Positions 12,601 to 33,600 of a stretch of DNA of 64,000 nucleotides are shown piece after piece. The translations under genes were made by a program, and so were the position numbers. Position 1 is the first letter of the stretch, and each line of letters starts with the position of its first letter. The notes beneath the pieces are model-generated. The model did no database searches, was not told where the DNA came from, and saw nothing but the letters and a program-made list of their open reading frames with translations. The DNA comes from Lytechinus pictus. Its lineage: Eukaryota. The DNA lies in the NCBI RefSeq assembly GCF_037042905.1, contig NC_087251.1, positions 41,292,001 through 41,356,000 on the forward strand. The letters are read 5' to 3'.

Positions 12601-15600
12601 AGTTAGAATAAAAGAAGGATGAAAGAAATAATAAAGGAAAGAAAAAAGGTTCCTTCATTCTTTGAAATAAATAAACAAAAAAAAAACGAAAGAAAAAAAA
12701 GGAATGGATAATGAATGAACGGTTTGAAAGAAAAAAAAAGGAAAGAAAAAAAAGAAGGTAAGAAAAAAACGGAGGATGAATGAAGGAAACAAAAATGTTT
12801 TCTTCATTCTTTGAGAAAAGAAAGAAGAAAACAGGAAGGAAGGGAATAGCAAAAAGGAAAAAAAAAGAAAATAAAGGATAAAAGAGATGAAGGAGAAAAT
12901 GAAAAAAGAAAGAAAATAATGGAAGGAGAGAAAGAACAAAAAGAAAAGGGAGAGGAAGGGAAAAGGAAGCAAAGAAAATTTTAAGAAAAGAAAGAAGGAA
13001 GCAAATAAAAAAAAAGGAAAGTATTTAAGATAAAGAAGGAAAAAAAGAAAGAAAAAAAAAACAATGAGGGACATGTAAAGAAGGAAAGAATGAAGAAAAT
13101 AAATGAACACAGAAAAAAGGGAAGGAAAGCTAGGAAATAAAAAGAAATAAAGATAGATGGAATGAAAAAGGGAATTCAGAAAAGATAGGACGAAGAGAGA
13201 AGGAATGGAAAAACAGAAAGAGAAAAAGAAAAAATCAGGAAGGAAGATAAGAAAGAATAAGGGAAAGGAAAAGTAAAGGAATGAAAGGAAGGAAAGAATG
13301 AAGCAAAGAGAGAGTGAAAGCAAGAAAAGAATGATCGTAGGAAAGAAGAAAGAGGGAATGACAGAAAGAATGAAAAGAAAAAAGGAGAGGAAGGGAGTAA
13401 GAAAATTAAGGAAAGAAAGAAGAAAGGAAATAAAAGAAGGAAAGTAAAAAAAGGAAGGAAGGAAAGAGCAAAAAATGAACAGAGAGAGAGAAAGGATCAG
13501 TAAAGAAAGCTAGGAAAGATTTGCAATAAGATAGAACCAAATAAAAAGCAAGCAGGAAGGATAGAAGAAAGGATGAAGAAAAGAAGGATAGAAAAGAAAG
13601 AAAGATAAAAGAAAGAAAGCAATAAAAAAAGAAATGAAGAAAGAATTAAAGAGAAACAAAATTCAAACTTCAAGCAAACAAAACAAATGTAATCATCTAA
13701 CAAAAAATCTTACTGATATTTGTTTTTTTTAATAATATATTAAAAAAGACTAAAATGTATTAGAAACGAATAAAATTTCAAAGTGAAACATTGTCAAACT
13801 TAAAAATTAGGTGAAACATCGCGGCATCGCACCTACACAGGCTAGGCATCCCTCTTCCCATTGCCGTGTCTCCTTGTTATCGTTGCGAAGAAGACTCAAA
13901 ACAAAAGGTGAACAACTAGACCGATCTAGTAATGAAAACTCAATAACTTGCTCCTCCGATTACATCACCAAATCATTAATCTGAGAATCCATTACATGTA
14001 ATTATAAAATTTCCTGCCGATTTTATGATTATTTTGTTGGAAAAACTGTTAATCATGTGAGATCGTTCACTTTGATTCAGAGTTTGCAAATCTCCTCCGA
14101 TCATGCAAGCCTGCCACACACCACACAGGCAGGCAGGCCAGGCCACGTGCAGCAGCTAGTACATGTACACTGCATGCTGACTTTGCGTGTGTGAGGGTGT
14201 GTGTGTGTGTGTAGATCCAAGAAAATCACGGAAAATGGCTTGCAGTTTGTATTGAGGGAAGTTGTTAACTTTGTTTTTTTCTCTCTCTCTTCTGTATTTT
14301 TGCTTGTGAAATATGGGAGAACTAAGTTGTAAACTATAATCTTACACTGAGAAAGGGCATGACCAGTTTTGAAAAAAGGGCACGTCGGCCAGTTAGAAAA
14401 AAAAGGGCACGGCCTATTTGGCCGTGAATTGATCATTTTTTGTAAGGGCATCACGGCCAGTTATAGGGGCATCGACAGCCTGGCCGTCGATTAATTTATG
14501 CCCTGTAACTTAGTAAGTTTATGGATCTAGTTCATGAAACATACACATCCAAGGGTATCAGGTATAAATTATATTAGATCACATGATCATGGTAAAAGGT
14601 CATGTTGGGTCAATGGACATAGTATTTTATTCTTCTTTTGTGAATGATTATTTAATAGCTGTTTTCAAAGTCAGCACTGCGGCTATATCTAATCGCGTAA
14701 TGCAGGCGAGACTGCCAGAGGTGTTCCACTTGTTTACCTTTAGATCTGAAAATTCATCATGTCAGTTTGATCCGTAAAAGCAATCTATGGAGATTGTGTT
14801 TTGTTAGATTAATTTTTTAAAAGAAAACTCATGATTTCCAAAGTCATGACTTTGAAAGACCATATTTTGATAAGAAAGCAAACTTGCTACAAATCAAATA
14901 TTTGTGTAGATCAGCTCACAAGCTTTCCAAAAATATATAGTTTGTTGGGGTACAGGTACTTAGTAAGAATCCTGTGCTTCATTACACACGGTAGTCGTTT
15001 CTGTACGGCACCGTAATGCCCCAGGGGAATAGGTTCTTGAGAAAACCGAAAATCCCTGATATGGGAAAGTTGTTTCTACCACTTGTCATAATTCATTTAC
15101 TGAATCGCTGATTTAAAATTTATATTGTCTTTAATAGTGATGATGTAATTTTCAAAAAGTCATAGCCTACCTCTTCCTTGTCTGATTTTATTCAAACTCA
15201 CCATCCTCTTTTTTTATCCTCTCACACTCCATTTTACACCCAAGGTTGGATCCCCATTTAATTGTCTAGTTTTTAGGTCATTACAGTTTGAGTTGACTGC
15301 AAAGCTCATACATGTAGACTACTTTTGATCTACTTTCAACGTTACCTACGATCGTGGATCTGAAGTTGACATAGACTTTTCAGTTAGACTTTTCAGTGAA
15401 ACATCGTCACCACTTTCCTTGGTGGATTCATTCTAGGCTAAAGTCTAGCAGTGCTTCTTGTTAGGTCATTTTGGCATCAGCAGCCTAATAGCAAATTATG
15501 GAGGCGGCTTCCTAAGTCTAATAATCCAACCTCTCTTCCCGTCAGAAAAAAACAACAAGGCTCCGTAACACAAAGAAATAAAGAATAGCGATCATCAATC

Positions 15601-18600
15601 GCTAAATGAACTGAACAATCAATATCAATGACACATGCGCATTTGGTTTAAAATACTGACCAGGGACCAATCAGTGCGGTTCTTTCATATTTGCAATCCA
15701 TCGCAAACCTTTGTGTTGTGGAGCCCAGGACATTGTATAAGGCATATTCATTGCTCTCTGGTGTTAATTGTGGAGCCTTTTGTAAGAGAAAGTTGCACTG
15801 CCATTTGTTTTCAATTTAAAAAAAAAAAGATTGATGCATATCTATTTTTTATAGTCGATAGCACTATTAGTGAGAGGGAAGTCTATAAACTGTATGAAAG
15901 AAAACCGCATAGTCATTTGTCATTGTATTGGCATTTAAATTGCAGAAGATTTGTCACTTCAAAACCCAGCTCACTTCAAGACGGCTTTCTCATGTTTTCC
16001 ATCACTGTGTAGAGAATGTGGTGAATATCATGTGGAACTTGGAAATTTCTGTAATTTGCTTGGTGATGTTTGCACTGTTTGTATATCTCATAAGGTGGGA
16101 GTAGTCCTGAGAGATGTTATTCCTAGTGATGATATTGAAGTCATGCCACCTTTTTAAACTCAAAACTCAATTAACAAATAATTGTAATTCGTGTGGAAAT
16201 TCATTTCTATGAGATATGTAGAGATAAGCAAGTTTTTAGATTCTGTGATTTGAGTTTAGTCTCATGGAGAGATTGCTTTGAAATGATGCTCAAATGTCTG
16301 TCTTGTTATGCAAATAAATAAACATTTATAGGTCTTTATAGGTCATGTTCAACCCAGAAAATTGTTGATTTGAATCGATAGAGAATAATCAAACAGGCAT
16401 AATGCTGAAAATTTAATCAAAATTGGATGTAAAATAAAAAAATTATGACAATTTTAAGTTTCCCTTATTTTTCACAAAACAGTTATATGCACAACTCAGT
16501 GATATGCAAATGAGAGAGTCGATGATATCCCTCACTCACTATTTCTTTTGTTTTTGTCTCGCCTGCAAACATGTAACAGAGCGAAACTATATAGGCCCTG
16601 CTTTTCTGATGGCGGCGGCAGCGTCAACATCAAATTTTAACCTAAGGTTAAGTTTTTGAAATGACACCATAACTTAGTGTATGGACCTAGTTCATGAAAC
16701 ATGGACATAAGGGTAATCAAGTATTACTGAACATTCTGCCCTTGTTTCGGGTCACAAGACCAAGGTCAAAGGTCATTTAGGATCAATTAAATAAGACCAT
16801 GTTGGGGGAATCAATATCGAAATCTTAACCTACATGTAAGGTTAAGTTTTTTAAATGTCATCATAACTTTTAAAGTATATAGACCTAGATCATGAAATTT
16901 TCACAACATGTTAACCAAGTATTACTGAACATCATGCTCAAGGTTCAGGTCACAGGACCAAGGTTAAAAGGTTATTTAGGGTCAATGAACTTTGGGCATG
17001 TTAGGGTTATTTGTTGAATTTCCATCCTAACTTTAAATTTGTATGGAGCTAGTTCATAAAACTTGAACATAAGCACAATCAAGTATCACTGAACATCCTG
17101 TGTGAGTTTTAGGTCAAATGACTGTAAAGGTCAAAGGTCATAGGGTCTATGAACTTTTGCCATGTTAGGGTATTTGTTGAATTACCATCGTATCTTTGAA
17201 AGTTTATGGATCTACATGTAGTTCATAAAACTTAGACATAAGAGTAATCAACTATCACTAAACATCCTATGCGAGTTTCAGGTCACATGACCAAAGTCAA
17301 AGGTCATTTAGGGTCAATGAACTTTGGTCATGTTGGGGATATTTGTCATCATAACTTAGAAGGTTTATGGATCTAGTTCATGAAACATAGACATAAGGGT
17401 AATCAGGTATAAATGATCGGTTTGCACACATCTTAGATCACATGATCATGGTCAATGGTCATTTTTGGTCAATGGACATAGTATTTTATTATCATATGAA
17501 TGCTTTCTTTTGTGAATGATTATTCAATAGCAGTTTTCAAAGTCAGCACTGCTGCTATATTAATCGCGTAATGCAGTCGAGATTGCCAGAGGCATTTCAT
17601 TTGTTTATTGTTTGAATTACATAATAATTCAATTTTTATAGAATTGACAGTAAGGACCAACTTGACTTCATCATAAACTGTTGAAATAATGGAAATTCCA
17701 CGTATTCACGGAGGAATAAAATTTTGTTTCACACAACATTGATGAGAAAATTAGAATATTTCATATAATAAAATACAAAAGATATAGTGAGTTGGCGCCG
17801 TCATCAGTCTGCTCATTGCCTCATTTGGTTACCGGTCAGGATGTGCATATACATCTACATAACTCTTTTGTGAAATTAAGCAAAACTTCCATATTTTACA
17901 TCCGATTTTGATGAAATTTTCAGTGTTATGCTTGTTGGATATTTCTCCTTTTATTCATATCAACTTTATGTTTGGGTGGACTTGTCCTTTAAATCCATTT
18001 ATTCAATTACTGAACGTGAGTCTCCTTATAGAGGTGTTTTAAATTTAAAGTGAAAAAAAAATGAGCTCAAAAATTTGCTCAAAAATTAATGAATGGCAAC
18101 ATCTACATGTACTATGTTATGGTTACAGAACTCTTCTTTTTTTCTCACCTGCATAGCAGAGTGAGACTTAAGGCACTGCTTTTCCAATGTTTTGGTGGCA
18201 TTTTCAACATTAATTTCTTAACCAAGTTTAAGTTCTTGAAAAGTTTATGGATCTATTTCCTGAAACTTGGAATTATATAAGGGTAATCAAGAATAACTGA
18301 TCATCTTTCAAGATGTTTAGGTAATAGGACCAAGGTCAAAGGTCATTTAGTGTCAATGAAATGTCATCATAACTTAAAAAGTATATCATGGATCTATTTT
18401 ATGAAACTTGGTCCATGGAAAAAGGATTATCAACTATCACTGATCAACTTGCATGAGGTACAGTGCACATTATCAAGGTCAAAGATCATTAAGGGGGTAA
18501 TGAACTTTGACCATGTGTGGTATTAAAGGGATGGTCCGGGCTGAAAATATTTATGTCTAAATACATAGAGTAGAATTCACTGAGCAAATTGCCGAAAATT

Positions 18601-21600
18601 TCATCGAAATCGGATAACAAATGATAAAGTTATTGAGGTTTAAAGTTTAGCAATATTTTGTGAAAACAGTCGTCATGAATATTCATTAGGTGGGTTGATG
18701 ATGTCATATCTCCACTTTCCGTTTTCTTATGTTATTACATAAAATCATATTTTTCATTATTTCATTCTTGTGTGAATAATATGTATCCCTTATAATGAAA
18801 TAAGTTGCAGCAATAAATATCTAATGCACTAAATCAGTTGTCAATCCAATTTTTCTAGTGAATATTCATGACGACTGTTTTCACAAAATATTGCTAAAAT
18901 TTATAATTCAATAACTTTGTTATTTGTTATCCGATTTTGATGAAATTTTCGGCATTTTGCTCAGTGAATTCTGCTCTATTTATTAAGCTATAAAAACTTT
19001 CAGCCCGGACCATCCCTTTAACTTTCAACCAAGGTATAACTTCGAAAGTAAATGGATCTATTCCATGAAACATGGACACAAGGGTAATCAATTATCAGTG
19101 ATCATCTTGCATGAGTTTCAGGTCATGTGGTCAAGGTCAAAGGTCATTTGAAATCAACAAATTTAGTATTTTATTTATGCATGTTTCATGAAAAATTATT
19201 CATCTTAGTTTTCAAATTCGGCACTGCTGTTATATTGAATTGCGTAATGCATGCAGGATTGCCAGGGGCATTCCACTTGTCACAGATTCATCTCTGATTG
19301 GACGACTGTGCTGGCTCTGTTGCCCCTACATTTTTTTTTACATTAGCGATCTTAACCCCAGACTATCCCTCTTAGCACCGCAATTTCTCTGCTAACCCTG
19401 CTATTTTGCAGGGCCAAGTAATCCTGTACTATAGGTGGGGTTAGCTCATTTTGCAAAAATGCTGCTTAACCACGTTCTATAGGTGTGGCTAAATTGCAAT
19501 TAGCCCCACCTATATGGTATGGAGTAAAGGAAATTTTTGCTAGTGTAAAATTGGTTATCACATCACTTCATACCTGAATGAACAGAGAGAGAGAGGGAGA
19601 GATAGAAGGAGAACTAGAGATAGGAAGAAGTAGAGGGATCGGCCACATGGTACGACATGTGACTTTCGGAGATGGATAATAAAAAACTCAATATGTTGTA
19701 CCACGTGTTATGCACTGTGACTAAAATACACGGTGACTAAAATACACGCGACTTGGAGAATGCTCTTTATCAGTGTTAATACGAAAATGACGTCTAATTG
19801 CATTAACGATTGGCATTTAATTCATTTCATTAAAAGGATTAGTCTTTGTTAAGCTCCCTTTTCTCATCTTGTTTTGTTTCCTTTTGTGTATTTCTTAGGT
19901 TTGATTTAATTTTGTTTCCAAGATAATTACTGCTATACACAAGTATTTAGTTTCCAGCGTAAGAGGCATCGAGATTTGTGTGGGCAGCTCAAACTTAAAC
20001 TGGGGTAATTATGGTCTGCCTCTGAAAAGATACTGTTAGATGGCACTCTCCAGAAGACCATGTTCTGGGAGAACTCTTCACTATTAGCAAAAAAAAAATG
20101 TATAAATGGATTATTTTGAAAACAATATTTCAAGGAATATGTAAGGTAGTGTTGAATTATCATGATGAAAAATATCTTGTTAATGACATCTCTTGAAGTT
20201 GTCATATCAGGGAGGGGAGCTTAAGAAAATACCCTTCCTGGTATGACTATCACAACAACTCCATCAACAATACAAAACAGAAACAAACGGAAAATGAGGC
20301 AAAATTCATAAAATTACCTTAAAACTTCTTTTATTACGCAAAGGCGCCCTCTTGCGCTGACAAGAATCGCACATGTACATGACATACCTCCCCCCTTAAA
20401 AGAAGAAAGTTATAGCAATTTAACTTTCTTTCATTTTAAAGGAGCATGTTGATAAAGCATAACATTATAACGCTCAGAAGAACGAGGAATATGAAAACTA
20501 AAAAAATTCATTCAAGTGTATAGTCAAGACGTAGCATCATAAACATTTACAAAAAGAGATGCAGAAAACTTCAATCAATAACAAGTTGGTTTTACCTTAG
20601 GAATTCCAATATCACTTAAAAAAACATATGCCAATACAACAAGGTGACTTAACTCTGCAAGACTCTTGTCTTTTTATATACATACATATAAGACCTTTCT
20701 ATAGCAACATGAGCTATTTAATCATAAAAAAATAAAATAAAATGCAAGAACTTTGATCCAGCTTCATGTTTACAAATGCAGAACCTGAAAAGAGAGAAAA
20801 AATAAATAAATGAAGAGAGTAAGAGTTAGAATATGTAGACTTGTTAGAACAGAATGAATTGTTCCATGTAATTGATAAAACGATTTTGTCATTAAAAGAT
20901 AGTTGTTAATAAATTGTTAGAGACATTCATTTCAAAACATTGCTTGACCACCTGGATGTTGGAGTAAAAAGAAGAAAATCACCCTTTTTTTTTTTTTTTA
21001 ATTGTTATTATTGTTAGTGTTATTTGTTTTTGTTTTCTTTTAATATTTTTATGTGAATACTAGTTAACGACCGGTTTGCAGCTTTCCGGTTATGTTTTTT
21101 TGTTTTTATTTTTGTATTATTATTGTTTTGTTTGTTGTTTCTAAGGAGGTTATTCGGCAATTGACTGTTAGATTTGCCTAAACTCTAGAAAGTGCATCCG
21201 CAATAACATTGTCATTTCCCTTGATATGAGTCACGTTCAGCCCATAAGGCTGAAGAAACAGACTCCAACGGAACAATCTCTGGTTCTTGTTCCTAAACCT
21301 TTCGAGGAAGGTTAGTGGATTGTGATCCGTGAAAACGGTCACATCAGGGCAGCTACTCAAATACACATCAAAGTGTTGAACTGCCAGCACCAGACCTAGG
21401 CACTCCTTCTCTACCGCAGAGTATCTTTGCTGGTGTACATCAAGCTTCTTCGAAAAGTAGCTCACGGGTTTCATGAAACCCTCTTCATCCAACTGAAGGA
21501 GAACTGCACCAACTCCTACCTCACTTGCATCAGTGGCCAGTAGGAACGGATGCTCAAAGTTAGGAGCCTGTAATACAGGCTTTGAGATAAGAACAGCTTT

Positions 21601-24600
21601 CAATTTCTGAAAGGCAATCTCACATGGTTTGGTCCAATCAAACTTGGTCCCCTTCTTGAGAAGATCTGTAAGAGGAATAGCAATGTCACTGAAATTCGGA
21701 ACAAACTTGCGGTAAAACCCACACATGCCCAGAAACCTCATCACCTCCCTCTTTGTGGAAGGGGCAGGGAAATCCACAATAGCTTGGATCTTTGCCTCTC
21801 GTGGGGCAACGCGTCCATGCCCTACTACATGACCCAAGTAAGATACTGTTGCCTGCGCAAACTCACACTTGGACAAATTCACAACAAGTCCTGCCTTGGT
21901 CAATCTGACAAACACATCTCTCAAGCAAGTTAGATGATCTGACCAGGTATCACTAACTACTAGAATATCATCAAGATATACTACAACATTGTCCAGTCCG
22001 GCAATTACACAATTCATGAGCCGTTGAAATGTCGCTGGAGCATTCCTCATGCCAAATGGCATAACCCGACACTGGAATAACCCCTGTGGGGTCACAAATG
22101 CAGAGATTTCTTTTGCCCTCTCTGTTAATGGCACCTGCCAATAACCTTTCATCAGATCCAGCTTTGTGATATACCTTGCATTACCAATCTGATCAATGCA
22201 ATCCTCAATACGAGGTAGAGGAAATGAGTCAGGTTTTGTTACAGCATTGACTTTCCTGTAGTCAATGCAAAAACGCTGACTCCCATCTGGTTTTGGAACA
22301 AGAACTACAGGTGAACTCCAGCAGCTCTGACTAGGCTCAATGACACCGCATGCAAGCATATACTCAAGTTCCTTCCGCACCTGGCTCTTCTTTCTTGGAT
22401 TCAAACGGTAGGGATGTTGTTTAATAGGCAGATGATCGCCTACATCAACATCATGAATAGCCTCTCCGGTATATCCCAACTTATCTCCACATACTTCAGG
22501 GTAATCAAGAAGTATTTGCACTACATCCTGCTGTTCAAAATCTGATGGATGACCCAATATCTTTGAGGGATCAGCCATCACCTGTGAGTTATTCACCTTT
22601 CCAGACATCCCTTCACCAATCTCCGCTTCCACCGGGATTTCAAGTTCTGCAGGAATATGTTCTGCTGCCTTTTCACAAACAACAGCAACTGTCGCCACCT
22701 CGTCACGATCATAATACTTCTTCAGCATATTAATATGGCAAACCCTCTTTGTTTTTCTCCTGTCTGGAGTACTCACAAGATAGGTTTCTTTACCCAAGTT
22801 CTTCTCTACCACATATGGACCACTGAACTTTGCTCTAAGAGGTTCACCCTGGATGGGCAGTAACACAAGGACTTTGCTACCAGGCTCGAATGAGCGAGGT
22901 TCTGCCTTCTTATCTGCCCGGGCCTTCATTGCACCTTGAGACAACCTCAAATGTTCCCCCGCGAGTTCACACGCCCTCAAGAGTCGTTCACGAAATTGTG
23001 ACACATAATCAAGCACATTCCCACTCTCCACCCCAAAATCTGACAACATATGCTCCTTCACCACCTTGAGAGGACCTCTTGGCTCATGGCCAAACACAAG
23101 CTCAAATGGGGTGAATCCCGTAGATTCATTTGGAGTATCACGAGAGGCAAATAGGAGGAAAGGAATGCCCTTTTCCAAGTCTCCAGAGTTCTCAGAGCAG
23201 TAAGACTTGATCATTGTCTTTAAGGTCTGATGGTATCTCTCAAGGGCACCCTGCGACTGTGGGTGGTAAGGTGATGAGTTTACCTGCTTGATTCCTAATT
23301 GATGCATCACCTCCTGGAATACACTAGACGTGAAATTAGAGCCCCGATCTGACTGGATGTCTTGAGGGAGTCCATAGCGTGTGAAGAACACCAAGAGGGC
23401 ATCAATAACCGTCTTAGCCTTAATGTTCCTCAACGGAAAAGCTTCTGGAAAACGTGTGGTGGAATCCATGACAGTAAGCAAGTATTGATAACCTGCCTTG
23501 GTTTTCGGCAAAGGGCCAACACAATCTATCAATACACGGCTAAATGGTTCAGGAAAAACAGGAATTGGAATAAGTGGGGCTGGTTTGATGTGATGTTGTG
23601 GCTTGCCCACCACCTGACAGACATGACATGACTTACAATACTCAGATACGCACTTCCTGAGACCAGGCCAGTAGAAATGAGCCCTAATCCTGGCCACTGT
23701 CTTCCTCACACCTAGATGTCCAGCAAGGGGAATATCATGAGCTAACCTTAGAATCTCTGCTCGATACTGGGGCGGGACAACAATCTGATCTACCGCAACC
23801 CAATCTTCATCAGCTGGGCGACCAGGAGGACACCATTTTCGCATCAACACACCAGACTTGATGTAATAACACTGTGAGACCTTCTCAGCCTCCTCTGCTG
23901 TCAAAGCAACATGATACAAACCCTTCAAGTCTGCAGCTGACTGTTGGGCTGCAATCAAGGCAGGCTGGCTGAAAACAGTCCTATCATCACCAGTCTGACT
24001 ATTCATTCTCTCACTCAGATCTCTGAAAATTGTATCCCCTAAATCTATGTCATCACCATTTTCAACCTCTCTCTCATCTCGCCCTGCCATAGCCTGCGCT
24101 CTGGTAACCGCACACGATGGAAAAATACCTGGGATAGCCGTTTTCAAAGCCTCTGTCTTGGAATCCACTACCGGCATGTCACTCAACACAGTAGATGGCT
24201 GCACCTTACCCCCAGCCAAATCATTGCCAAGCAGCATTGTGATTCCCTTCATAGGCAATCGAGAAACAACGCCAACTGTCACTCGCCCAGAAACCAGCCC
24301 ACTACAAAGTTCTACATCATATAGAGGAACAGATTTGAAACCTTCATTCACATCTTGGATCAGAACTCTCATGCCTGTGAAACTAGATTCAATGGATGAC
24401 TCATCAGCAATTAATAGTGTCTGAACAGAGCCAGTATCTCTCAAAATCACAACAGGAAATTCTTCTCCATCAACAGTGAACTTCACCGTGCCATCAGAAA
24501 TAAATTCCTTGTATCCTTCATCCACCCCATCACGAAACGTCTGCTTTACCCCATCACCACACACAGGGTCTCCTACACAAACCGTAGCCGGCCGAACAAA

Positions 24601-27600
24601 ACCGCTGGCCTGGACTTTATTCTGACCAGTATTCTTGTCCTTTAGTTTCTGACAGTGAGAAATAAGGTGCCCATCCTTCTTACAGTATGCACAAAACAAC
24701 CTGCCCTCTGGTCTAACACCATTAGACTGGCTACCACCACTCAACTTACTCTTCGGCGACTTTGACCTCTCCATTTCCTTATGTAACGTCTCGGACCTAC
24801 TCCAACCAAAACCACTCGCTAACGGACTAGAAGGTTGGAGCTGCGATGCGCTACTTCTATGTGACAACTCATACCCATCTGCCAACATTGCAGCATTTCT
24901 GACACTAACAACAGCATGATCATTCATGTACGTTTTAACATCACGGGACATGCATCTTGTGAACTCATCAATCAAAACAACCTCACGCAGTGATTCATAT
25001 GTCGTCTCAATTCTCAGAGACCGGATCCATCTATCAAATGCGACCTCTTTTCGACGTGCAAACTCAACACAAGTCTCTGCAGAATCCCTCTTGAGATCAC
25101 GAAACATCTGACGGTATGCCTCTGGGACTAGCTCAAACGCCTGAAGGATGGCATCTTTCATTTTCCAATAGTCAAAAGCGTGATCATAGCTCAATGCAGA
25201 CACGACAGACTGTGCCTTGCCTGAAATTACTTGCTGAATGAGCAATGCCCAGTCACTTTCAGGCCATTCCATTTTCCTGGCTACTCTCTCAAACAAAAGA
25301 AAGAACGAGTCTAAATCAGTCTCATCATACCTTGGAATAAGCTTTACCCTGGCAGAGAACCCAGCTTCCATTGACCTTTTCTCTCTCTCACCCAACTGCC
25401 CACTCTGAGACACAATTTCACTATGCCGCATCATCTCAAACTCCAGTCGCTTTCTTTCCATTTCCCTCTCATGCTCAGCAGCTCTCAGCCTATCTCTTCT
25501 TTCTTCTAGTTCAATACGGGCCAGTGCAAGCCGTACTTCATCACTGTCAAGTTTAGTTCTGTCATCACAATCATTATCAGAATCACCACTCATACTTTCA
25601 GGTATCAATTCCGCACGGGCCGCAATAGCAGAAAATAACTCTGCCTTAGTCTTCAAATCCGAAAGATCTAGCGACATTTTCTGTCCAACCGCTATCAGAT
25701 CATCTTTACGCAGCTGACGCAAGCGAACGAGTGTAAGGTCTGCCTCTAAAAACGTATCTACATTAAACTGTGCCATATTTCTCTATCCAGTAAATTGACA
25801 GAAAAAAAAGAAGAATGAAAGAAAAGAAACAAGTATTTAGGAGATCTAACAACAGTATGTCTAAAAAAAAAAATCATTAAAATGTCATGCGCCCATGCCA
25901 CGGACCAGGCTATGTCACACGCGTTTCAGTTTTGAAACCATATGTTCAGGTCTAATGTCAAAATAGTATGACCTAGTCTAAGAGACAAAAAAAAAAAAGG
26001 TCACATCAAAAACTCCTCTATTCTAAGACTAAGAGTCTAACTCTAACGTTAAGGCTCTAGAATGGCATAGGACCTAGACTGACTCAAGAATCAAGGATAG
26101 GTCTAAATCATCAAAGTAGACAACGTTACGAAATGTCCTTGCCGGCCAAACTCATCCAGGCAATGAACAGAGCAGAATCGCGACGAAAAATGTCCTGGAA
26201 AGTGTAGAAAAATGCACAGTATTGACAGTAAGAATATTAAATAGCACCAGCCAACGACTGCAGTACAAGCTATTTAATAAATAGACCTAAATCCTGAAAT
26301 CGAGACCACAAACAACGCCTACGCTACATGTAACTTAGTACAGAAGTAGCCGAGACAAGCAAGCAGTAGGCAAATGCCAAAGCAGAGAAAACCCCGACAT
26401 CAAATTAGATACGTGGGACAATAACGTAAACAAAAGCGAGATCGGACACAACCCGAGCAAGAAAAATGGCTTGTAAAATTATATTTCGGACAAGCCCCCA
26501 TATGTCATATCAGGGAGGGGAGCTTAAGAAAATACCCTTCCTGGTATGACTATCACAACAACTCCATCAACAATACAAAACAGAAACAAACGGAAAATGA
26601 GGCAAAATTCATAAAATTACCTTAAAACTTCTTTTATTACGCAAAGGCGCCCTCTTGCGCTGACAAGAATCGCACATGTACATGACAAAGTGCAATCTAT
26701 CAATATTAGAAGTATTAACTTATTCCATAGATAATGTTTTTAATTGACCGTGCATCACTAAACATAATTTTTCCTGTTTTTAGCAACTTGGTTTGCATCA
26801 AATAAAAACAAAAACAAAGTTCAGTGTTATGTCATATGAATTCCATACACCATTTTTGTCTTGCATGAATAGCAGGAGTAAGACATAGGGCCTTTTCACA
26901 CATGAATCTTGAATCATTGTAATGATGATTGCAATTCATCTTTAGAATCATCAGACCTTTCACACGCTCACTCGGAATCTGTGATTTGAATTCGAATTCC
27001 CGAGCGAAGGCGGTATGTGTCCTTGGTGACTAGTCAATCAAAGCGCTGCATCGCAAATGAGTGCATGACAATTGTATTATCTACAGAAGTGCTTTAAAGG
27101 TCACATAAACTCGGCCCCCAAAAGATGTTTTGGAGGTCAGGCCTTTCACACGCAAAATTCGTACCATAATTTGAGTGAAACTTAACTGGAATTCACCTCC
27201 GGAGTAGAATTTGAATTTGTGATTGTGATTAGCGTTTGTGATTCTAATATTATTCTAGTTTGGTTTCACACATTCTAAAAATTCGTATTTAGCCTTAGTT
27301 TTCACTGGAATCATCATTCAAATTATGATTTTTTTACTGTGTGAAAGGGTGGATAGGCTCTGGCCACTTTTGTGATGACAGCGGAGATGCTGTCAACTTC
27401 AAATCTTAACAAAGGTCTAGTTCGGGGGTTTTCAAAGTATGACCCACAGGCTGCATCCAGCCCGCTGAGCTTCTTAGTGCATCCCACTAGACTCTACTGT
27501 TTCTTTCCCTCTTTTTAATCACTTTTATGTCATAATTTGAAACATGCATCAATGCCACTACATTGTGAGCCCTCAGCCCATTGAACCATAATGAAGGTTG

Positions 27601-30600
27601 TGACAATATAATGACTTATAATGAAAGTTCGGTGAGTTTTGAGCCGTTTCTGTCTTTTCTAGTCTGTTATTCAATGAAATCAAACATAGCAATAATACAT
27701 TGACAGCAACCCCCAGTTTGGATCTACATATTACACGTGTGAAAGTGCAGTTTCCACAATGAACATTATTATAGAACTCAAACCGACACACCTTATCAAG
27801 TGAACATTTGCACCAGTGCCTTCGTCTGGCAATCACTCATTTTGTACCAAGGGTTAAGCAACATATTGCTGACAGACAGTGATGATTCTGTGCAAGTTCA
27901 GGTCACATGAGTAAGGTCAAAGGTCATTTACAGTCAATGAACATTGTATTTTATTATCATACAGCGTGTCCCACGAAAAATGTGAATGGAACTTACGATG
28001 GGTATATCAAAATTACAATATTATTTAATTTGTTTATATTTTACACTCATAAACTACAACTTATTTTCTCTTTAATAGTGGATGAAGTTTTATGTGATAT
28101 GGTCCATTAATCACAAAGATATGAGCATTTGTTAATTACACATCAGGAAACCTCTCCATCCAAGTTTTGTATAAAATAATATGTGTAGTCAGGCTCAGTT
28201 ATTCAAGTGGTGCAATCGATTCACGTTCAGTCACAGCATGGAAGTAAATCTGCGAGGATTTTTTTTGTTCATGACTTGGGGATGACCTATTCATTCATCC
28301 CCCTCTAATGAATAGATGAGATCACGGATTTAAACGAAATTGTTTTAATTTATTTCTTTGAAGTTATTCTTTTAATAGCTTCTTTGTTCTTTGATGTTCA
28401 TGTTTCATTAAAGATATCAAGTTTAACTAAATATATCCTGCTTATTATCTTAAAACTTGATTTTTATGCCCCCGGAGATGAAGTCCGGAGGGGGTATTAA
28501 GCGTTGCCCCTGTCCGTCCGTCCGTCCCCCCACTTGGTTTCCGCGCAATAACTCGAAAAATATTCAATGGATTTTAAAATTTGTTGGTGTGTAGGTAGAT
28601 GACACAAAAATACAGGCTAAGTTCGAATTCGGAGTCCGCAGGTCAAAGGTCACAGCTCATTATATATGCGAGTTGGTTCATAGGTCTCAATTTGTTCATC
28701 ATGCATATTGGTTTCTGCACGATATTATGTTCAATCATATTGAATGAATTTCTGATCGCGTTAAGTGGGGGCATTTGTGTCCTCTGGACACATCAAATTT
28801 CTAGTTTTTTTTTAATTTAAGTATCGGTACGCAAATTGTCAGCCAAAAATCTAAAAAAGGGAAATAAAGTAAGAGTGAATAATGATATGATTGGACTGCA
28901 TAATTTATTCAGCATAGTAACAAAACTTGGATTGAGAGGTTTTCTGATGAGTACTGAAAGAAGGCTCATATCTCTGTGTTTGATTTACCATATTGCATAA
29001 AATTTAAGACAGTTGTATAAAACAAATGCAAATTTATGATTGTAAAATAACTTGATTTTGTAATATTTACATTATGCTCATCTAAAGTTCCATTAACATT
29101 TTTTGTGGGACATGCTGGATAAATGATGTTTTAAAAAAAAAATTCAATAGTTGTTTTCAAAGTCAGCACTGCTGCTATGTTGAATCATGTAATGTCGGCA
29201 AGACTGCCAGAGGCATTGCACTTGTTAAAAAACTAACTTACTATCCATATCTGTTATCATTACTTAACCCTTCAAATATGTCACATCTTTATATGTGGTG
29301 TTCAATGCTCCTAGAGTCCTGAAAGTGAGGAAATTGAACAACAATTAAAGAGCATTCACGAAATTCCTATCAATAGTTCAGCGAGGTGAACAAACAAGGC
29401 AGTCGATTTTTCTAATTGGTTCTCTCTCCTCTCATCCAGTCGAATGACAATAGACTATCGCTTTCCATTGAGAGGGAAAAGAAATGCGAGAAGGAGAAGC
29501 CTTCCAATCCTCTTGAAATAGCTCCAAGGGAATCCCAGTGATTGAAGGCAGCCTATCACGTGTATTCCCATGTGACATTACCGTTCACGTGGCTAATCAT
29601 GCTACCTAGTATACACAGCCAAGGATTCATTGCGGTTGCAAAGACGTGATCACCACGGGAGATTCCCTCCACTGATGACGTGAAGCGATCGAACGTGTTG
29701 ATCGTATCTGGAAGGGAGTCGACTTTGAAATTGATATTCACAAAAACAACTTTTAGTGAGGATTTGAGACTTATCTTTAATAGAGAAAACATCTCTTTTC
29801 TTTATTCACTCATAATTTTTTTTAAATATTGAATTTGAATTGTAACCCATCCCCATAGCTTGTTCAATAATGGTGTACTTTTGCCAAAATTAACTGAACA
29901 ATTTTCTTTATACATTGGGACGCACTGTATATTCAATACTTGTTTTGGGGCACCATTTTCTTCAAAATTGTCCTAAATCTGCAACATGAATTTGACAGAG
30001 ACCCTTAATTTCTTTTAAAGAATTTTTGTTATACGTGTAAGTAACATGATTTGTCATAGTCCTATGTCACGAGAAAGTCCACTATAAAACATACATGTAT
30101 TGATCTGTGCAGCTTCTAATACCTGTAACTTCTAATACTATTATATTGTTCATTACCCAATTGTGTGATAAACACCCCAAAATAGATGAATAGCCCTAAG
30201 ATTGAAAAAAATAGTCTTTTAAAATTGACTCCTATTATCCTGTCCCTGATTTATGATTGTGTCCCTGGGTATGTGTAGATGGACTGCTTATTATTATGCC
30301 AGGAGTACCATATTATGACACAATTGTGCTTTTCACCAATTATTTGTTATAAGCTACTGAAATCCTTGAATCTGATTGGCTCAGAGCAAATATGATTTTT
30401 TTTTCACGAAGTGTTCCCAAGGATACCCATTCACCTCACTTGGGTTGAGTATAGTAAAATGTGGGTGAATTTCTTACTGAAGGAAAACACACCATGGCTG
30501 GGATTTGAACCCATGTTCCACTGATTGAAAGATGAGTTAAAACCGCTAGGCCACGACACCCCATTTTTCTACAAGTTTGCAGATGAGAATGACATGGATT

Positions 30601-33600
30601 ATATTCTGCTTTAATATAGTGCTTTATAATACATTGGAACAATGTCTTTAAACACTTGACAGATATATTACCCCGGTCATCAGACCCTGGCATGTCCAGA
30701 TACAATGTATGCACTTTCTTCACTCCCTGGGGAGTATTATGAATAGAGTGCAATATTCTTTGTAGTTTGTACTTTTTTTCGAAGATTTTCAGACTTAATT
30801 GATTTTTCACATCATTTCTCAGACATGAAGGAATTGATACTTTTAGCCTGAATGCTGGAGTGCACGGACCCAGAATGAATAATTTCTCCATCTTTCGATA
30901 TATTTTTCTGAACTGAACTGGAAATTTTGAAGAAAATTCCATCAGTTTTGATGGAGCACAGTAATAAGAATTCAAACAAATAGATCCTCTGTCAATTTAT
31001 ACCACAAGCATTGGTCAAACTAGAGCTAAAATGATGATCTGTGCATGTGTGTGTTTCTCAGACTATTGTTTTCTAGAGTACGTCACTTGGGTGTGGGCGT
31101 GTGAATAGATATGCCTGTTAAACAATGTGACCAAAAACACATCAGATTGATCCATAAATGCACACGAGGAAAGCATTCTAATTATAGCTTCATTTTTTAT
31201 TAATTGAATTTAAGATTGGTAAACAGGTCTATGGTGAGACATGTGAGACATTTACGTAATTCTTGAAGGTAGTTTATTTATCATAGGTTTGTTATTTATT
31301 TTTCTGTTTTTCATACTGTGTTTTCATAATTTATGTTATTCATGTGGATATCTGTTCATTTTATTTCCCTTGTCAGTATGTTCTGACAAGAAGTAAGACA
31401 TTTATCTCACAGTTTTATCCATGTCATGATGTGTCTATTGTATTAGAAGGGAAGGGGTAAATCTTACAACTTGGGACTGAATGAAGTAGTTCAGATATGA
31501 TATGTTACATGCCTTTATTGCGAGAATTACCCCACCCCATGCCTTCTTTTACAAAATTCTTTAATAATAATAATGAACTATATTTGTATAGCGTTTATCT
31601 TTAAAAATGTCTGCAAGCACTTAAGAATTTAGAAATAGATTTATTTTCAGCCAAAAATGAAGTTGTACATGTATAGTTTTTGACAATTTGAAGATTAACA
31701 TTCTGCCTCAATTTAAGACATTTTTTTGTTGTTGTCAGTTGGCACCATGTGCAAATGAGAACAAGTGTTCAAGTTCTTTAATGAACTTTTCTGGAGTCAA
31801 ATGGATGGTATTTCAATTAAATGTTCTCCAAGATTTTACCAAAAATGCTTGACTTGTTTCTTTCATAGCCATTACAAGCATTGACTCAGTGTACTCCTGA
31901 GTTCACTCTGTTTAACCCTGGCAGAGAAAAGATTCTTAGTAAAGGAAAGATGTGACAATGCATGGAAAATGAATAGAATTGATAGTAAAAGAAAAATGGC
32001 AGAATATTGCATAAAAGAATGATAAAAGGAAAATCATGCATTCAAACATATTATTCGAAATAAGAAAACACCCCAAAAGGAAGCCAAACAAGTAATGCTC
32101 ACAAAACTGTAAAGGTCACAAATGTTACACATTCATTTTCCATTGTTGTGGACAAAAATGAAGGTGAAATCTTTCTTTATGAAATTAATTTTTATTCCCC
32201 AACATTAATGTCATTTTTGTTTCTCACCTATTTTTTGTGAATAGCTTTCTTATGTGATATACTAAAGCTGATATGTGAGCAGGCGTGGGGTTCCATCAAT
32301 ATCGCGTTTGTATCCGAGGCTTTAGCAAGTATCCCAGCATTCCCTGCATGGCGACATTCATCCCTCCAGATGATAAGGTAAGATGTTCCGTTTCTTTTCT
32401 CTGGACCTTATTACCATGATATTATTTGTAAATGACGTGAAAGATTACCATAGTCATGTCTCATCTTTCACACTTGATAATTTTATTTGTCTTCTGATAT
32501 TGTATTTTGAATATTTTGAAGGATTTTTTTTAGAATGAAAAAATCACTAGTTTTGAGGTGTTTTTTTTAATTCTTCAATTTTTTTTTGATCTATTTTTCT
32601 ATTGATTGATTCATATATGAAATATTGTTCATTAATTTATTCATCCATCCATCTGTCCACCCATCTTTCTTTCATTCTTCCTTTCGTTCTTTCTTTCGTT
32701 CGTTCGTTCTTTCTTTCTTTCATTCTTTCTTTCTTTCTTCATGTTTACCCATTAAAAGTTGTATGTTGGTATATTGATTGACATCTTTAGGGATAAGCTG
32801 TCTTCTGGTATCCTGTATAGTTCCACTGGTTACCGAGCCATCATCCAGTGCTTCTTCCTTAGAGCCTGTCTACATCTCCTAGACTGGACTACTATCTCAC
32901 TGCATCAGTTCTCCAATTTACTTAGTATATGCAATACTGGACATGTTCTGAAGAGGGGTTCACCACTCTGGGAGGAGGTGATTAATTAGATATTTTGGAT
33001 GGTATAGTTCTAAAGATATCAATATTTTCATTTTCCTGATGAGTTACCAGGGAACCATATCATGAACACACCCCTGTTTGATTTCTATATCCTAGATTAA
33101 AATGTATTCTCATATGTATCATGTTTGACTTGTTAGGTGGAATTAGTAAAGGATTATGAAATTTTAATGAATAGTTAATTCCTTCGACAAAATACATACA
33201 TGTATATGCACTTTCACATTTTGTTGCTGTGATGACTTTTTTCCGCACATTTGTTATGAGTGTTCTTATCAATTGATTCAATATCATTGGGATTGTTGTA
33301 AAAAAACATGATAATGTGATCCCTTCTTTGAAAAGAAAGAAGTCTACAATGCTGTGAAATATATTTGAAAAAAATGTTCTTGTATTAACTGTATGAAGTA
33401 TGACTGTGATTTGAAATTCTATTCTAAAAGATGAAAGCTTGATTTGAAAGCCAATATTTTAGGATGTTTAACCTTCAATCCTATAGCGCAGTCACATTTT
33501 CCCTACAGCGGCCGTACAGCGAGTCGAAAACAGCCGTTTTTACCATTTTTTCGTACCAGCTACATATAGGTGGTTTGAATAAAAATGGAGAAAACGGCTG

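What the first reader, a model, noticed from the sequence alone, without database searches (positions are those of the whole stretch)
20200..26687. Intact, very recently inserted Gmr1-type Gypsy element with integrase before RT (PR-INT-RT-RH)
Seen: one uninterrupted 1532-aa ORF. Along the minus strand the protease motif (LRDTGS, about 24430) is followed by integrase (HHCC about 23740, DDE 23530-23240, GPY about 22815), then RT (YLDD about 21970) and RNase H (TDASE about 21530). The two 185-bp LTRs read identical by eye, and TSD, tRNA-Pro PBS and PPT are intact. Known: Gypsy elements normally order RT-RH-INT; the copia-like order with a Gypsy-type RT defines the Gmr1 clade of deuterostomes, whose Gag has been proposed as the source of the SCAN domain. 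Inference: a potentially active copy and probably a polymorphic insertion.
Basis: partly seen in the sequence, partly recalled or inferred. Interest (0 to 1): 0.8.

Follow-up and report, generated by a model that had tools for sequence, protein, structure and literature searches.

The report
Young Gmr1-like retrotransposon in urchin
This is a structurally complete, recently inserted copy of a known kind of jumping gene (a Gmr1-like Ty3/Gypsy retrotransposon, with integrase ahead of reverse transcriptase), sitting backwards in an intron of a sea urchin's TARBP1 gene; it is a clean example, not a new kind of element.

Summary

Pfam and the solved Ty3 polyprotein show SCAN-like Gag, protease, integrase, then RT/RNase H. 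That matches the published definition of Gmr1-like elements. The RT is Ty3/Gypsy-type (RVT_1; Ty3 RT E 5e-95), not Copia-type.

The host is Lytechinus, most likely L. pictus. The ORF is 1527/1532 identical to L. pictus LOC129258664 at another locus. Three copies at 99.1% identity or more lie elsewhere in that genome, so the family moved recently.

Qualifications:
- The clade is not restricted to deuterostomes. All 133 relatives collected, including bivalve and sponge proteins, have the same order, and crustacean members are published.
- 185 identical bases only bound the insertion age at about 11% of the time since the L. pictus and L. variegatus lineages of this family separated.
- This copy carries four private amino-acid changes. 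One replaces a Trp in the integrase core that is invariant in 112 relatives, Ty3 and foamy-virus integrase. Autonomous activity is therefore unproven.
- Polymorphism could not be tested.

It is a new member of a known kind, of modest interest.

The parts
20196..20199 (.). Target-site duplication, left copy (AAGT on + strand)
   Evidence: Read. It matches 26688-26691.
20200..20384 (-). 3' LTR (185 bp, TG..CA)
   Evidence: 100% identical to the 5' LTR. for the sequence.
20387..20397 (-). Polypurine tract AAGGGGGGAGG, 2 nt upstream of the 3' LTR
   Evidence: Identical in sibling copies L003, L004 and L002.
20398..21177 (-). 3' untranslated region (about 780 nt, A-rich, no ORF of 100 aa or more)
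21178..25776 (-). Single gag-pol ORF, 1532 aa
   Evidence: It is 1527/1532 identical to L. pictus XP_054752873.2.
25603..25776 (-). Gag N-terminal helix-loop-helix module (aa 1-58), SAP/HeH/Rho_N-like; weak evidence
25393..25557 (-). Long single helix in Gag (aa 74-128), possible coiled coil
   Evidence: AlphaFold2 model.
24856..25125 (-). Capsid C-terminal lobe, SCAN-like (aa 218-307)
   Evidence: Pfam SCAN 38.9 bits against a cutoff of 27. ZNF24 SCAN 3lhr E 0.035. Fold matches are to PNMA2, Arc, retroviral capsids and MZF1 SCAN.
24652..24693 (-). CCHC zinc knuckle (nucleocapsid), [14 protein letters not shown]
   Evidence: The C, G, H and C columns are invariant in relatives.
24187..24489 (-). 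Aspartic protease region (aa 430-530): DTG at 24427-24444, LLGND at 24220-24234
   Evidence: Motifs only. R-D-T and G-N-D are invariant in 25 relatives. There is no Pfam or PDB sequence hit.
23608..23778 (-). Integrase zinc-binding HHCC domain (aa 667-723)
   Evidence: Pfam Integrase_H2C2, E 9.5e-22.
23260..23550 (-). Integrase catalytic core (aa 743-839); D751, D810, E846
   Evidence: Pfam rve, E 3.6e-16. Aligns to Ty3 IN and PFV IN.
23176..23178 (-). Codon 867: this copy has Leu where all 117 aligned relatives, Ty3 and PFV integrase have Trp (private substitution)
22711..22839 (-). Integrase C-terminal SH3-like / GPY-F module (aa 980-1022)
   Evidence: Pfam Integrase_p58_C 31.1 bits; SH3_Tf2-1 weak.
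21826..22299 (-). Reverse transcriptase (aa 1160-1317), YLDD
   Evidence: Pfam RVT_1, E 1e-37, and no RVT_2 hit. Ty3 RT 4ol8, E 4.9e-95.
21244..21636 (-). RNase H (aa 1381-1511)
   Evidence: Pfam RT_RNaseH and RT_RNaseH_2. Aligned to Ty3 RH.
25777..26486 (-). 5' leader (about 710 nt) between the primer binding site and the ATG
26487..26500 (-). Primer binding site TGGGGGCTTGTCCG (tRNA-Pro type), 2 nt after the LTR
26503..26687 (-). 5' LTR (185 bp)
26688..26691 (.). Target-site duplication, right copy (AAGT on + strand)
10797..32240 (+). Host intron of the TARBP1 orthologue that holds the element in antisense orientation. The flanking exons are 10647-10796 and 32241-32378.
   Evidence: tblastn of TARBP1 proteins. 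P0220 residues 272-321 and 322-367 map to the two exons contiguously.

Best explanation
The feature is a structurally complete, young copy of a Gmr1-like Ty3/Gypsy LTR retrotransposon family of the sea urchin genus Lytechinus. The window is most likely L. pictus. The copy sits in antisense orientation in a 21.4-kb intron of the TARBP1 (tRNA methyltransferase) gene.

Mechanism, inferred from the anatomy and from the standard LTR-retrotransposon cycle:
1. A full-length RNA runs from the 5' LTR to the 3' LTR.
2. It is translated as one Gag-PR-IN-RT-RH polyprotein, with no frameshift.
3. The protease cuts the polyprotein.
4. Gag builds particles. Gag has an N-terminal helix-loop-helix module, a long helix, a two-lobed capsid whose C-lobe is SCAN-like, and a CCHC knuckle.
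5. tRNA-Pro primes minus-strand synthesis at the primer binding site, and the polypurine tract primes the plus strand.
6. Integrase inserts the DNA and makes a 4-bp duplication.

The integrase-before-RT order is a fixed trait of the whole clade, not a rearrangement of this copy.

The family was transposing recently in L. pictus. This copy is cis-competent: both LTRs, the primer site and the polypurine tract are intact. It carries private amino-acid replacements, including one at an otherwise invariant integrase Trp. It may therefore depend on proteins from sibling copies.
For: Anatomy.

Domain order: Pfam gives SCAN 218-307, Integrase_H2C2 667-723, rve 743-839, Integrase_p58_C 986-1020, RVT_1 1160-1317 and RT_RNaseH 1406-1511. 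One reference protein, Ty3 Gag-Pol 7q5b, matches with its RT-RH (586-1008) on our 1108-1531 and its IN (1084-1449) on our 660-1026. The two blocks are therefore swapped relative to Ty3.

Clade trait: all 133 relatives collected have IN before RT, and 116 of them show the full SCAN-PR-IN-RT-RH order.

Literature: Gmr1-like elements are defined by exactly this order with a SCAN-type capsid.

Tree: the window groups with L. pictus P0129 and then with L. variegatus copies (100*). It lies inside the same-order group that holds the fish elements, apart from the one canonical-order element available.

Host and family:
- 99.7% protein identity to L. pictus LOC129258664, and 96% to L. variegatus.
- Other L. 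pictus copies lie at different loci at 99.1-99.5% DNA identity, with identical or nearly identical LTRs.
- dN/dS is 0.115 (dS 0.147) against the L. variegatus copy, which shows selection for coding function in the family.

Host gene.

Private substitutions.
Against: - The protease rests on motifs only.
- The type element Gmr1 of Gadus morhua was not in any tree. Only one canonical-order outgroup was available, and it is a long branch carrying an in-frame stop read as X.
- The sea urchin tRNA-Pro 3' end was not available. The primer-site assignment rests on the vertebrate tRNA-Pro sequence and has one G.U position.
- No transcript, small-RNA or population data could be examined.
- The species assignment rests on the similarity of a mobile element, not on a host marker.
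Confidence: 0.9

Rival explanations
1. One reading: this copy is itself an autonomous, currently active source element and a segregating (polymorphic) insertion.
For: - The ORF is intact and all catalytic motifs are present.
- The LTRs are identical, and the primer site, polypurine tract and target-site duplication are intact.
- Sibling copies at 99.1% identity or more lie at other loci, so the family moved recently.
- The exact protein is not among annotated genes, although a 99.7% sibling is. That would fit absence from the annotated reference, but other explanations are possible.
Against: - Four amino-acid changes are private to this copy against five close copies.
- L867 replaces a Trp present in 112/112 distant relatives, and also in Ty3 and PFV integrase.
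- P1077 replaces a Leu present in 109/112 relatives.
- A1454 replaces a Thr present in 110/111 relatives, although Ty3 has Ala at that position.
- Of the 8 private ORF substitutions, 4 are replacements, which looks unconstrained.
- Polymorphism is untested.
Confidence: 0.25
2. It is an old, fixed insertion whose LTRs stay identical through gene conversion between them.
For: Identity of only 185 bp is weak dating evidence. LTR-LTR conversion is known in other genomes (general knowledge).
Against: - The whole 6.5-kb element differs by only 0.5-0.9% from copies at other loci.
- It has only 13 private substitutions in 6118 internal bases.
- Copies in the sister species differ by 12% in the LTR and by a dS of 0.147.
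- The target-site duplication is perfect.
Confidence: 0.03
3. It is a domesticated host gene derived from a retrotransposon, which the RefSeq label 'uncharacterized protein LOC...' on sibling copies might suggest.
For: Sibling copies are annotated as protein-coding genes. The family shows dN/dS of 0.115.
Against: - It has both LTRs, a primer site, a polypurine tract and a target-site duplication.
- It is multi-copy, at unrelated loci, with truncated and deleted siblings.
- It lies antisense inside an intron of another gene.
- Purifying selection is expected for any replicating element.
Confidence: 0.02
4. It is a Ty1/Copia-superfamily element, since integrase before RT is the Copia order.
For: The domain order PR-IN-RT-RH alone.
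Against: - RVT_1 scores 130 bits and there is no RVT_2 hit.
- The RT_RNaseH and Integrase_H2C2 families match.
- The best solved relative of both RT-RH and IN is Ty3 (E 5e-95 and 2e-38), followed by caulimovirus, foamy virus and MLV.
Confidence: 0.01

Closest known systems
Gmr1-like clade of Ty3/Gypsy (Metaviridae); type element Gmr1 of Atlantic cod
   Same: - Integrase lies upstream of RT/RNase H.
- The RT is Gypsy-type.
- The Gag C-lobe matches the SCAN domain.
- There is a single gag-pol ORF.
- Fish elements (Coilia grayii) are 47-48% identical over the full length, with the same architecture.
   Different: - The host is an echinoid.
- The window's lineage, with unnamed relatives P0002 and P0003 and a Diadema protein, sits apart from the fish lineage in the tree.
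- The type element itself was not compared.
Lytechinus pictus LOC129258664 (XP_054752873.2) and the other annotated copies of the same family
   Same: - 1527/1532 amino acids are identical.
- DNA identity is 99.5% over 6.4 kb.
- The LTR, primer site and polypurine tract are the same.
   Different: - It lies at a different locus.
- That copy lacks the first 49 bp of its 5' LTR, whereas the window copy has both LTRs complete.
- The window copy has four private replacements that the annotated copy lacks.
Ty3 of Saccharomyces (canonical Ty3/Gypsy; PDB 4ol8, 7q5b)
   Same: It is the closest solved RT-RH and IN. The same catalytic motifs are present, and the integrase C-terminal region aligns.
   Different: - Ty3 has RT-RH before IN, and here the two blocks are exchanged.
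- Ty3 has a gag/pol frameshift, and here there is one ORF.
- Ty3 Gag gave no SCAN match in our searches.
Ty1/Copia superfamily
   Same: The order is PR-IN-RT-RH.
   Different: The RT, RNase H and integrase zinc-domain families are the Gypsy and retroviral ones (RVT_1, RT_RNaseH, Integrase_H2C2). The Copia ones are not matched.
SCAN domain of vertebrate zinc-finger proteins (e.g. ZNF24 3lhr, MZF1 2fi2)
   Same: Gag residues 218-307 pass Pfam's SCAN threshold and align to ZNF24 SCAN. The fold search lists MZF1 SCAN among the capsid C-lobes.
   Different: Here the domain is the C-lobe of a retrotransposon capsid inside a polyprotein, not a dimerisation domain of a host transcription factor. The similarity to solved SCAN chains is weak (E 0.035).

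Membership tests
LTR retrotransposon (complete copy) | Two direct LTRs with TG..CA ends, flanked by a target-site duplication | tested here: met
   The 185-bp LTRs are 100% identical. TGTCAT..ATGACA ends and a 4-bp AAGT duplication are present.
LTR retrotransposon (complete copy) | A tRNA primer binding site next to the 5' LTR and a polypurine tract next to the 3' LTR | tested here: met
   The primer site matches 13/14 of the published tRNA-Pro site. The polypurine tract is AAGGGGGGAGG. The urchin tRNA-Pro itself was not available.
Ty3/Gypsy (Metaviridae) | RT and RNase H of the Ty3/Gypsy type rather than the Copia or BEL type | tested here: met
   RVT_1, RT_RNaseH and RT_RNaseH_2 match, with no RVT_2 hit. 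The best solved hit is Ty3 RT at 322 bits, against 191 for caulimovirus, 149 for foamy virus and 126 for MLV. No Copia or BEL sequences were in a tree.
Ty3/Gypsy (Metaviridae) | Integrase with an HHCC zinc domain, a DDE core and a GPY/F C-terminal module | tested here: met
   Integrase_H2C2, rve and Integrase_p58_C match. The integrase aligns to Ty3 IN 1087-1447. D751, D810, E846 and GPY are present.
Gmr1-like clade | Integrase domain lies upstream of RT (PR-IN-RT-RH) | tested here: met
   Pfam coordinates. The blocks are swapped relative to Ty3. The same order holds in 133/133 relatives.
Gmr1-like clade | Gag capsid C-terminal domain homologous to the SCAN domain | tested here: met
   Pfam SCAN 38.9-41.1 bits against a cutoff of 27. 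ZNF24 SCAN E 0.035. The fold matches are capsid and SCAN structures.
Gmr1-like clade | RT groups phylogenetically with Gmr1 and its relatives, apart from canonical-order Gypsy clades | tested here: inconclusive
   In a FastTree of 119 RT-RH sequences, the window falls inside the same-order group that includes fish elements. The single canonical-order sequence (L007) is the outgroup. The type element Gmr1 and further Gypsy clades could not be obtained as tool-given sequences.
   Same-order, SCAN-bearing relatives occur in Pinctada imbricata (P0055, 52-Mb contig) and Dysidea avara (P0068, 65-Mb contig). Crustacean members are published. This is a correction of the clade's description, not a failure of the element to belong.
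Autonomous, active element | All proteins functional; evidence of current transposition of this copy | not testable with these tools
   The ORF is intact and the family is under purifying selection. However, this copy has a private Trp-to-Leu difference at integrase residue 867 and two other private changes at near-invariant sites. No expression or population data were available.

The most novel reading that the evidence does not exclude
There are two linked possibilities.

(a) The family is transposing now in L. pictus, a sea urchin being developed as a genetic model, and this copy is a segregating insertion in TARBP1.

(b) Gmr1-like Gag proteins, from sponges to fish, carry a conserved N-terminal helix-extended loop-helix module of the SAP/HeH/Rho_N class, which is a nucleic-acid or chromatin-binding fold. 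One literature search found no description of it. Such a module could tether particles or pre-integration complexes to chromatin.
Probability: 0.3. Interest if true: 0.4.

Novelty: new member of a known kind. Interest (0 to 1): 0.2.

Why it matters
This copy has complete LTRs and dated relatives. It is a useful reference for annotating the 'uncharacterized protein' gene models that RefSeq carries for this family in Lytechinus. It is also a useful reference for masking such elements, which turn up as contamination in bacterial assemblies.

If the family is still moving, it is a source of insertional variation in laboratory lines of L. pictus.

The wide host range of same-order, SCAN-bearing elements (sponge, bivalve, echinoderms, fish) shows that the SCAN-like capsid lobe long predates its capture by vertebrate zinc-finger genes.

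None of this changes current understanding of LTR retrotransposons.

Tried and rejected
1. Exact look-up of the polyprotein in public assemblies found nothing on record.

2. I tried to reach the orthologous or empty site through the host gene.
   - The TARBP1 exon search gave only distant or fragmentary representatives.
   - Cluster look-ups named sea star, crinoid, lancelet and lamprey TARBP1 but no Lytechinus protein.
   - A search with the Patiria TARBP1 returned 8 proteins, none from an echinoid.
   - Presence or absence of the insertion in L. variegatus or in another L. pictus assembly therefore stayed untested.

3. Look-ups of two small flank ORFs, meant to catch read-level contigs across the junction, found nothing on record.

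4. The protease gave no Pfam hit on the segment. A 25-sequence profile gave no PDB hit. It remains a motif-level call.

5. The IMG/VR scan for outgroups returned only two loci. One is a permuted Gmr1-like contig and one is a canonical-order element. More outgroups were not pursued.

6. No tRNA-Pro gene was found in the window or in the five sibling loci.

7. Rfam found nothing at gathering threshold in the window.

8. Rejected readings: a Copia element, a domesticated gene, and an old insertion with homogenised LTRs. See the rival explanations.

Full report
**Observation.**
- The region holds one ORF of 1532 codons on the minus strand, 21178..25776.
- It lies between two direct repeats of 185 nt, 20200-20384 and 26503-26687, which are 100% identical.
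- There are no N in the window. No further copy, solo LTR or protein-level fragment of the element lies elsewhere in the 64 kb.
- On the element's sense strand the LTRs start TGTCAT and end ATGACA.
- The flanks carry a perfect 4-bp duplication: ACTT in sense orientation, AAGT on the + strand.
- The primer binding site TGGGGGCTTGTCCG starts 2 nt after the 5' LTR. The polypurine tract AAGGGGGGAGG ends 2 nt before the 3' LTR.
- The published primer site complementary to the tRNA-Pro 3' end is TGGGGGCTCGTCCGGGAT. Ours matches 13 of the first 14 positions, and the one difference still allows a G.U pair.

**What it is.**
- Pfam places the domains in this order: SCAN 218-307, Integrase_H2C2 667-723, rve 743-839, Integrase_p58_C 986-1020, RVT_1 1160-1317, RT_RNaseH 1406-1511.
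- A CCHC knuckle lies at 362-375. The protease motifs DTG (447-449) and LLGND (515-519) lie between Gag and integrase.
- The protease has no Pfam or PDB sequence hit. Its R-D-T and G-N-D columns are invariant in 25 relatives.
- The clearest evidence for the unusual order is one reference protein, the solved Ty3 Gag-Pol (7q5b). Its RT-RH (586-1008) aligns to our 1108-1531 at E 1.7e-94. Its integrase (1084-1449) aligns to our 660-1026 at E 1.6e-38. Relative to Ty3 the two blocks are exchanged.
- The RT is of the Gypsy and retroviral kind. RVT_1 scores 130 bits and there is no RVT_2 hit. Ty3 RT scores 322 bits, against 191 for caulimovirus, 149 for foamy virus and 126 for MLV. A Copia assignment is therefore rejected.

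**Gag.**
- An AlphaFold2 model of residues 1-400, built with 25 sequences, has mean pLDDT 79.
- Its PDB fold matches are retroelement capsids (PNMA2, Arc, dArc1, BLV, MLV, HTLV), PEG10 and MOAP1 C-lobes, and the MZF1 SCAN dimer. Foldseek probabilities are high but E-values are weak, 0.015 to 0.3.
- The Pfam SCAN hit is above threshold, and there is a weak ZNF24 SCAN match. Together these confirm the SCAN-like capsid C-lobe.

**Relatives and family membership.**
- The protein search returned 2311 proteins at E 1e-10 or better among the 8000 candidates scored.
- In all 133 proteins retrieved, integrase precedes RT. Of these, 116 show the whole SCAN-PR-IN-RT-RH series.
- Recent literature defines Gmr1-like elements by exactly this organisation. 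Earlier papers describe Gmr1 as the Gypsy lineage with Copia-like integrase position.
- Fish elements (Coilia grayii) are 47-48% identical over the full length.
- A FastTree of 119 RT-RH sequences was rooted on the only canonical-order element I could obtain, IMG/VR contig L007. The window pairs with L. pictus P0129, then with L. variegatus copies (100*), within the same-order group.
- Caveats on the tree: there is one long outgroup, support values are FastTree's, and the type element Gmr1 from cod is absent. I therefore rate phylogenetic membership as inconclusive. Architecture and homology are met.
A bivalve protein (Pinctada, 52-Mb contig) and a sponge protein (Dysidea, 65-Mb contig) fall in a starred clade with holothurian and echinoid elements. 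Crustacean members were reported in 2013.

**Host and context.**
- The ORF is 1527/1532 identical to L. pictus XP_054752873.2 and 96% identical to L. variegatus copies. The window is therefore Lytechinus, most likely L. pictus. This is an inference from a mobile element, not from a host marker.
- tblastn with TARBP1 proteins maps at least 14 collinear coding blocks (exons) on the + strand between 7474 and 61643. The TARBP1 proteins used are named.
- Residues 272-321 and 322-367 of one protein fall on 10647-10796 and 32241-32378. The element therefore lies antisense in a 21.4-kb intron of the TARBP1 orthologue.

**Age.**
- Zero differences in 185 aligned LTR positions give a 95% upper bound of about 1.6% LTR-LTR divergence.
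- The nearest L. variegatus copy (L002) differs from the window copy by 22/185 in each LTR and by dS 0.147 in the ORF.
- The insertion is therefore younger than about 11% of the time since those two family lineages separated. That makes presence at the orthologous L. variegatus site very unlikely.
- This dating is relative. I did not find a usable absolute rate or split date.
- Compared with three other young L. pictus copies, the window copy has 13 private substitutions and a few indels in 6118 internal bases, about 0.2%. If all of these arose in place, 0.8 changes would be expected in the LTRs, so seeing none is unremarkable (P about 0.45).
- 'Very recent' therefore means up to a few percent of the interspecies distance, not necessarily 'yesterday'.

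**Activity.**
- The family has clearly been mobile recently.
  - L001 is 99.5% identical at another locus, but its 5' LTR lacks the first 49 bp.
  - L003 is 99% identical, has identical LTRs and has a 947-bp internal deletion.
  - L004 is 99.1% identical and full length, but has gaps in the ORF and an annotated product of 928 aa.
  - L005 is about 97% identical and truncated.
- dN/dS of 0.115 between the species' lineages shows that the family replicates through functional proteins.
- For this copy the picture is mixed. All catalytic residues are present.
- Of its 8 private ORF substitutions, 4 change the protein:
  - D575 lies in a variable linker.
  - L867 replaces a Trp present in 112/112 distant and 5/5 close relatives.
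  - P1077 replaces a Leu present in 109/112 relatives.
  - A1454 replaces a Thr present in 110/111 relatives.
- Ty3 and foamy-virus integrase also have Trp at the position of residue 867. Ty3 has Ala at the position of residue 1454, so that change is probably harmless.
- I conclude that the copy is cis-competent and that its own integrase may be impaired. Whether it can move on its own is open.

**Polymorphism.**
- I could not test it.
- The exact protein is not on record, although a 99.7% sibling is annotated. This could mean the insertion is missing from the annotated assembly, but other reasons are possible.
- Routes through the host gene and through flank ORFs failed.
- A young insertion in a species with a large population is likely to be segregating. 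That statement is inference only.

**Verdict.**
- This is a clean, complete, young member of a known and very widespread clade.
- The classification in the finding is right.
- Its claims about host range, activity and polymorphism need the qualifications above.
- Novelty: new member of a known kind. Interest: about 0.2.

Noticed in passing
window 25603-25776 (minus strand; ORF aa 1-58): The Gag N-terminus is a conserved small helical module across Gmr1-like relatives from sponge to fish.
- Members give weak Pfam hits to Rho_N, HeH/LEM, SAP_new25, FANC_SAP and SAP.
- A profile hits the Ku70 C-terminal region 1jjr at E 5e-4, and also Rho N-termini.
- The AF2 model (pLDDT 84) superposes on the Rho N-terminal subdomain at 1.7-2.0 A over 41-47 residues, but the Foldseek E-values of 0.3 or more are not significant.
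- This may be a nucleic-acid or chromatin-binding module. One literature search found no description of it.
   Followed up: partly
window 7474-61643 (+ strand): The window is almost entirely the TARBP1 (tRNA guanosine-2'-O-methyltransferase) orthologue. At least 14 collinear coding blocks (exons) were detected by tblastn, and the last ones (59732-61643) encode the conserved SpoU methyltransferase end.
   Followed up: partly
proteins P0014, P0023, P0054: Full Gmr1-like polyproteins are deposited under bacterial names (Breoghania sp., Campylobacter sp. CS_ED1, a Candidatus Thiodiazotropha MAG). They have the complete SCAN-PR-IN-RT-RH order and nest among animal elements. They are almost certainly animal DNA contaminating bacterial assemblies.
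   Followed up: partly
L006 and L007 (IMG/VR contigs): Two contigs filed as viral genomes are LTR retrotransposons. L006 is a circularly permuted or tandem Gmr1-like element. L007 is a canonical-order Gypsy element with an in-frame stop in RT.
   Followed up: partly
L001:3090-3274: The annotated L. pictus copy LOC129258664 has an intact ORF, but its 5' LTR lacks the first 49 bp, which are replaced by unrelated sequence. The window copy is structurally more complete than the one in RefSeq.
   Followed up: yes
window 45167-46069: A tandem array of a 66-bp unit, 13.7 copies at 94% identity, lies inside a TARBP1 intron. It generates long spurious ORFs on both strands with meaningless Pfam hits.
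   Followed up: no
window 11598-11935 and 16944-17346: Two short tandem arrays (periods 161 and 169 bp, about 2 copies each) have related-looking units containing GTCAAATGACCAAAGTCAAAGGTCA-like motifs. They may be copies of one interspersed repeat family.
   Followed up: no
window 12001-14000: A strongly strand-asymmetric purine-rich stretch (GC skew 0.42, AT skew 0.47) holds degenerate AG-rich repeats of 35-47 bp.
   Followed up: no
window 20334-20339 and 26637-26642 (LTR positions 46-59 region, minus strand): The only AATAAA in the 185-bp LTR lies about 50 nt from its 5' end, within TAATAAAAG. With so short an LTR, this one site could serve as a TATA-like box or as the polyadenylation signal. 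The boundaries of U3, R and U5 are unknown.
   Followed up: no
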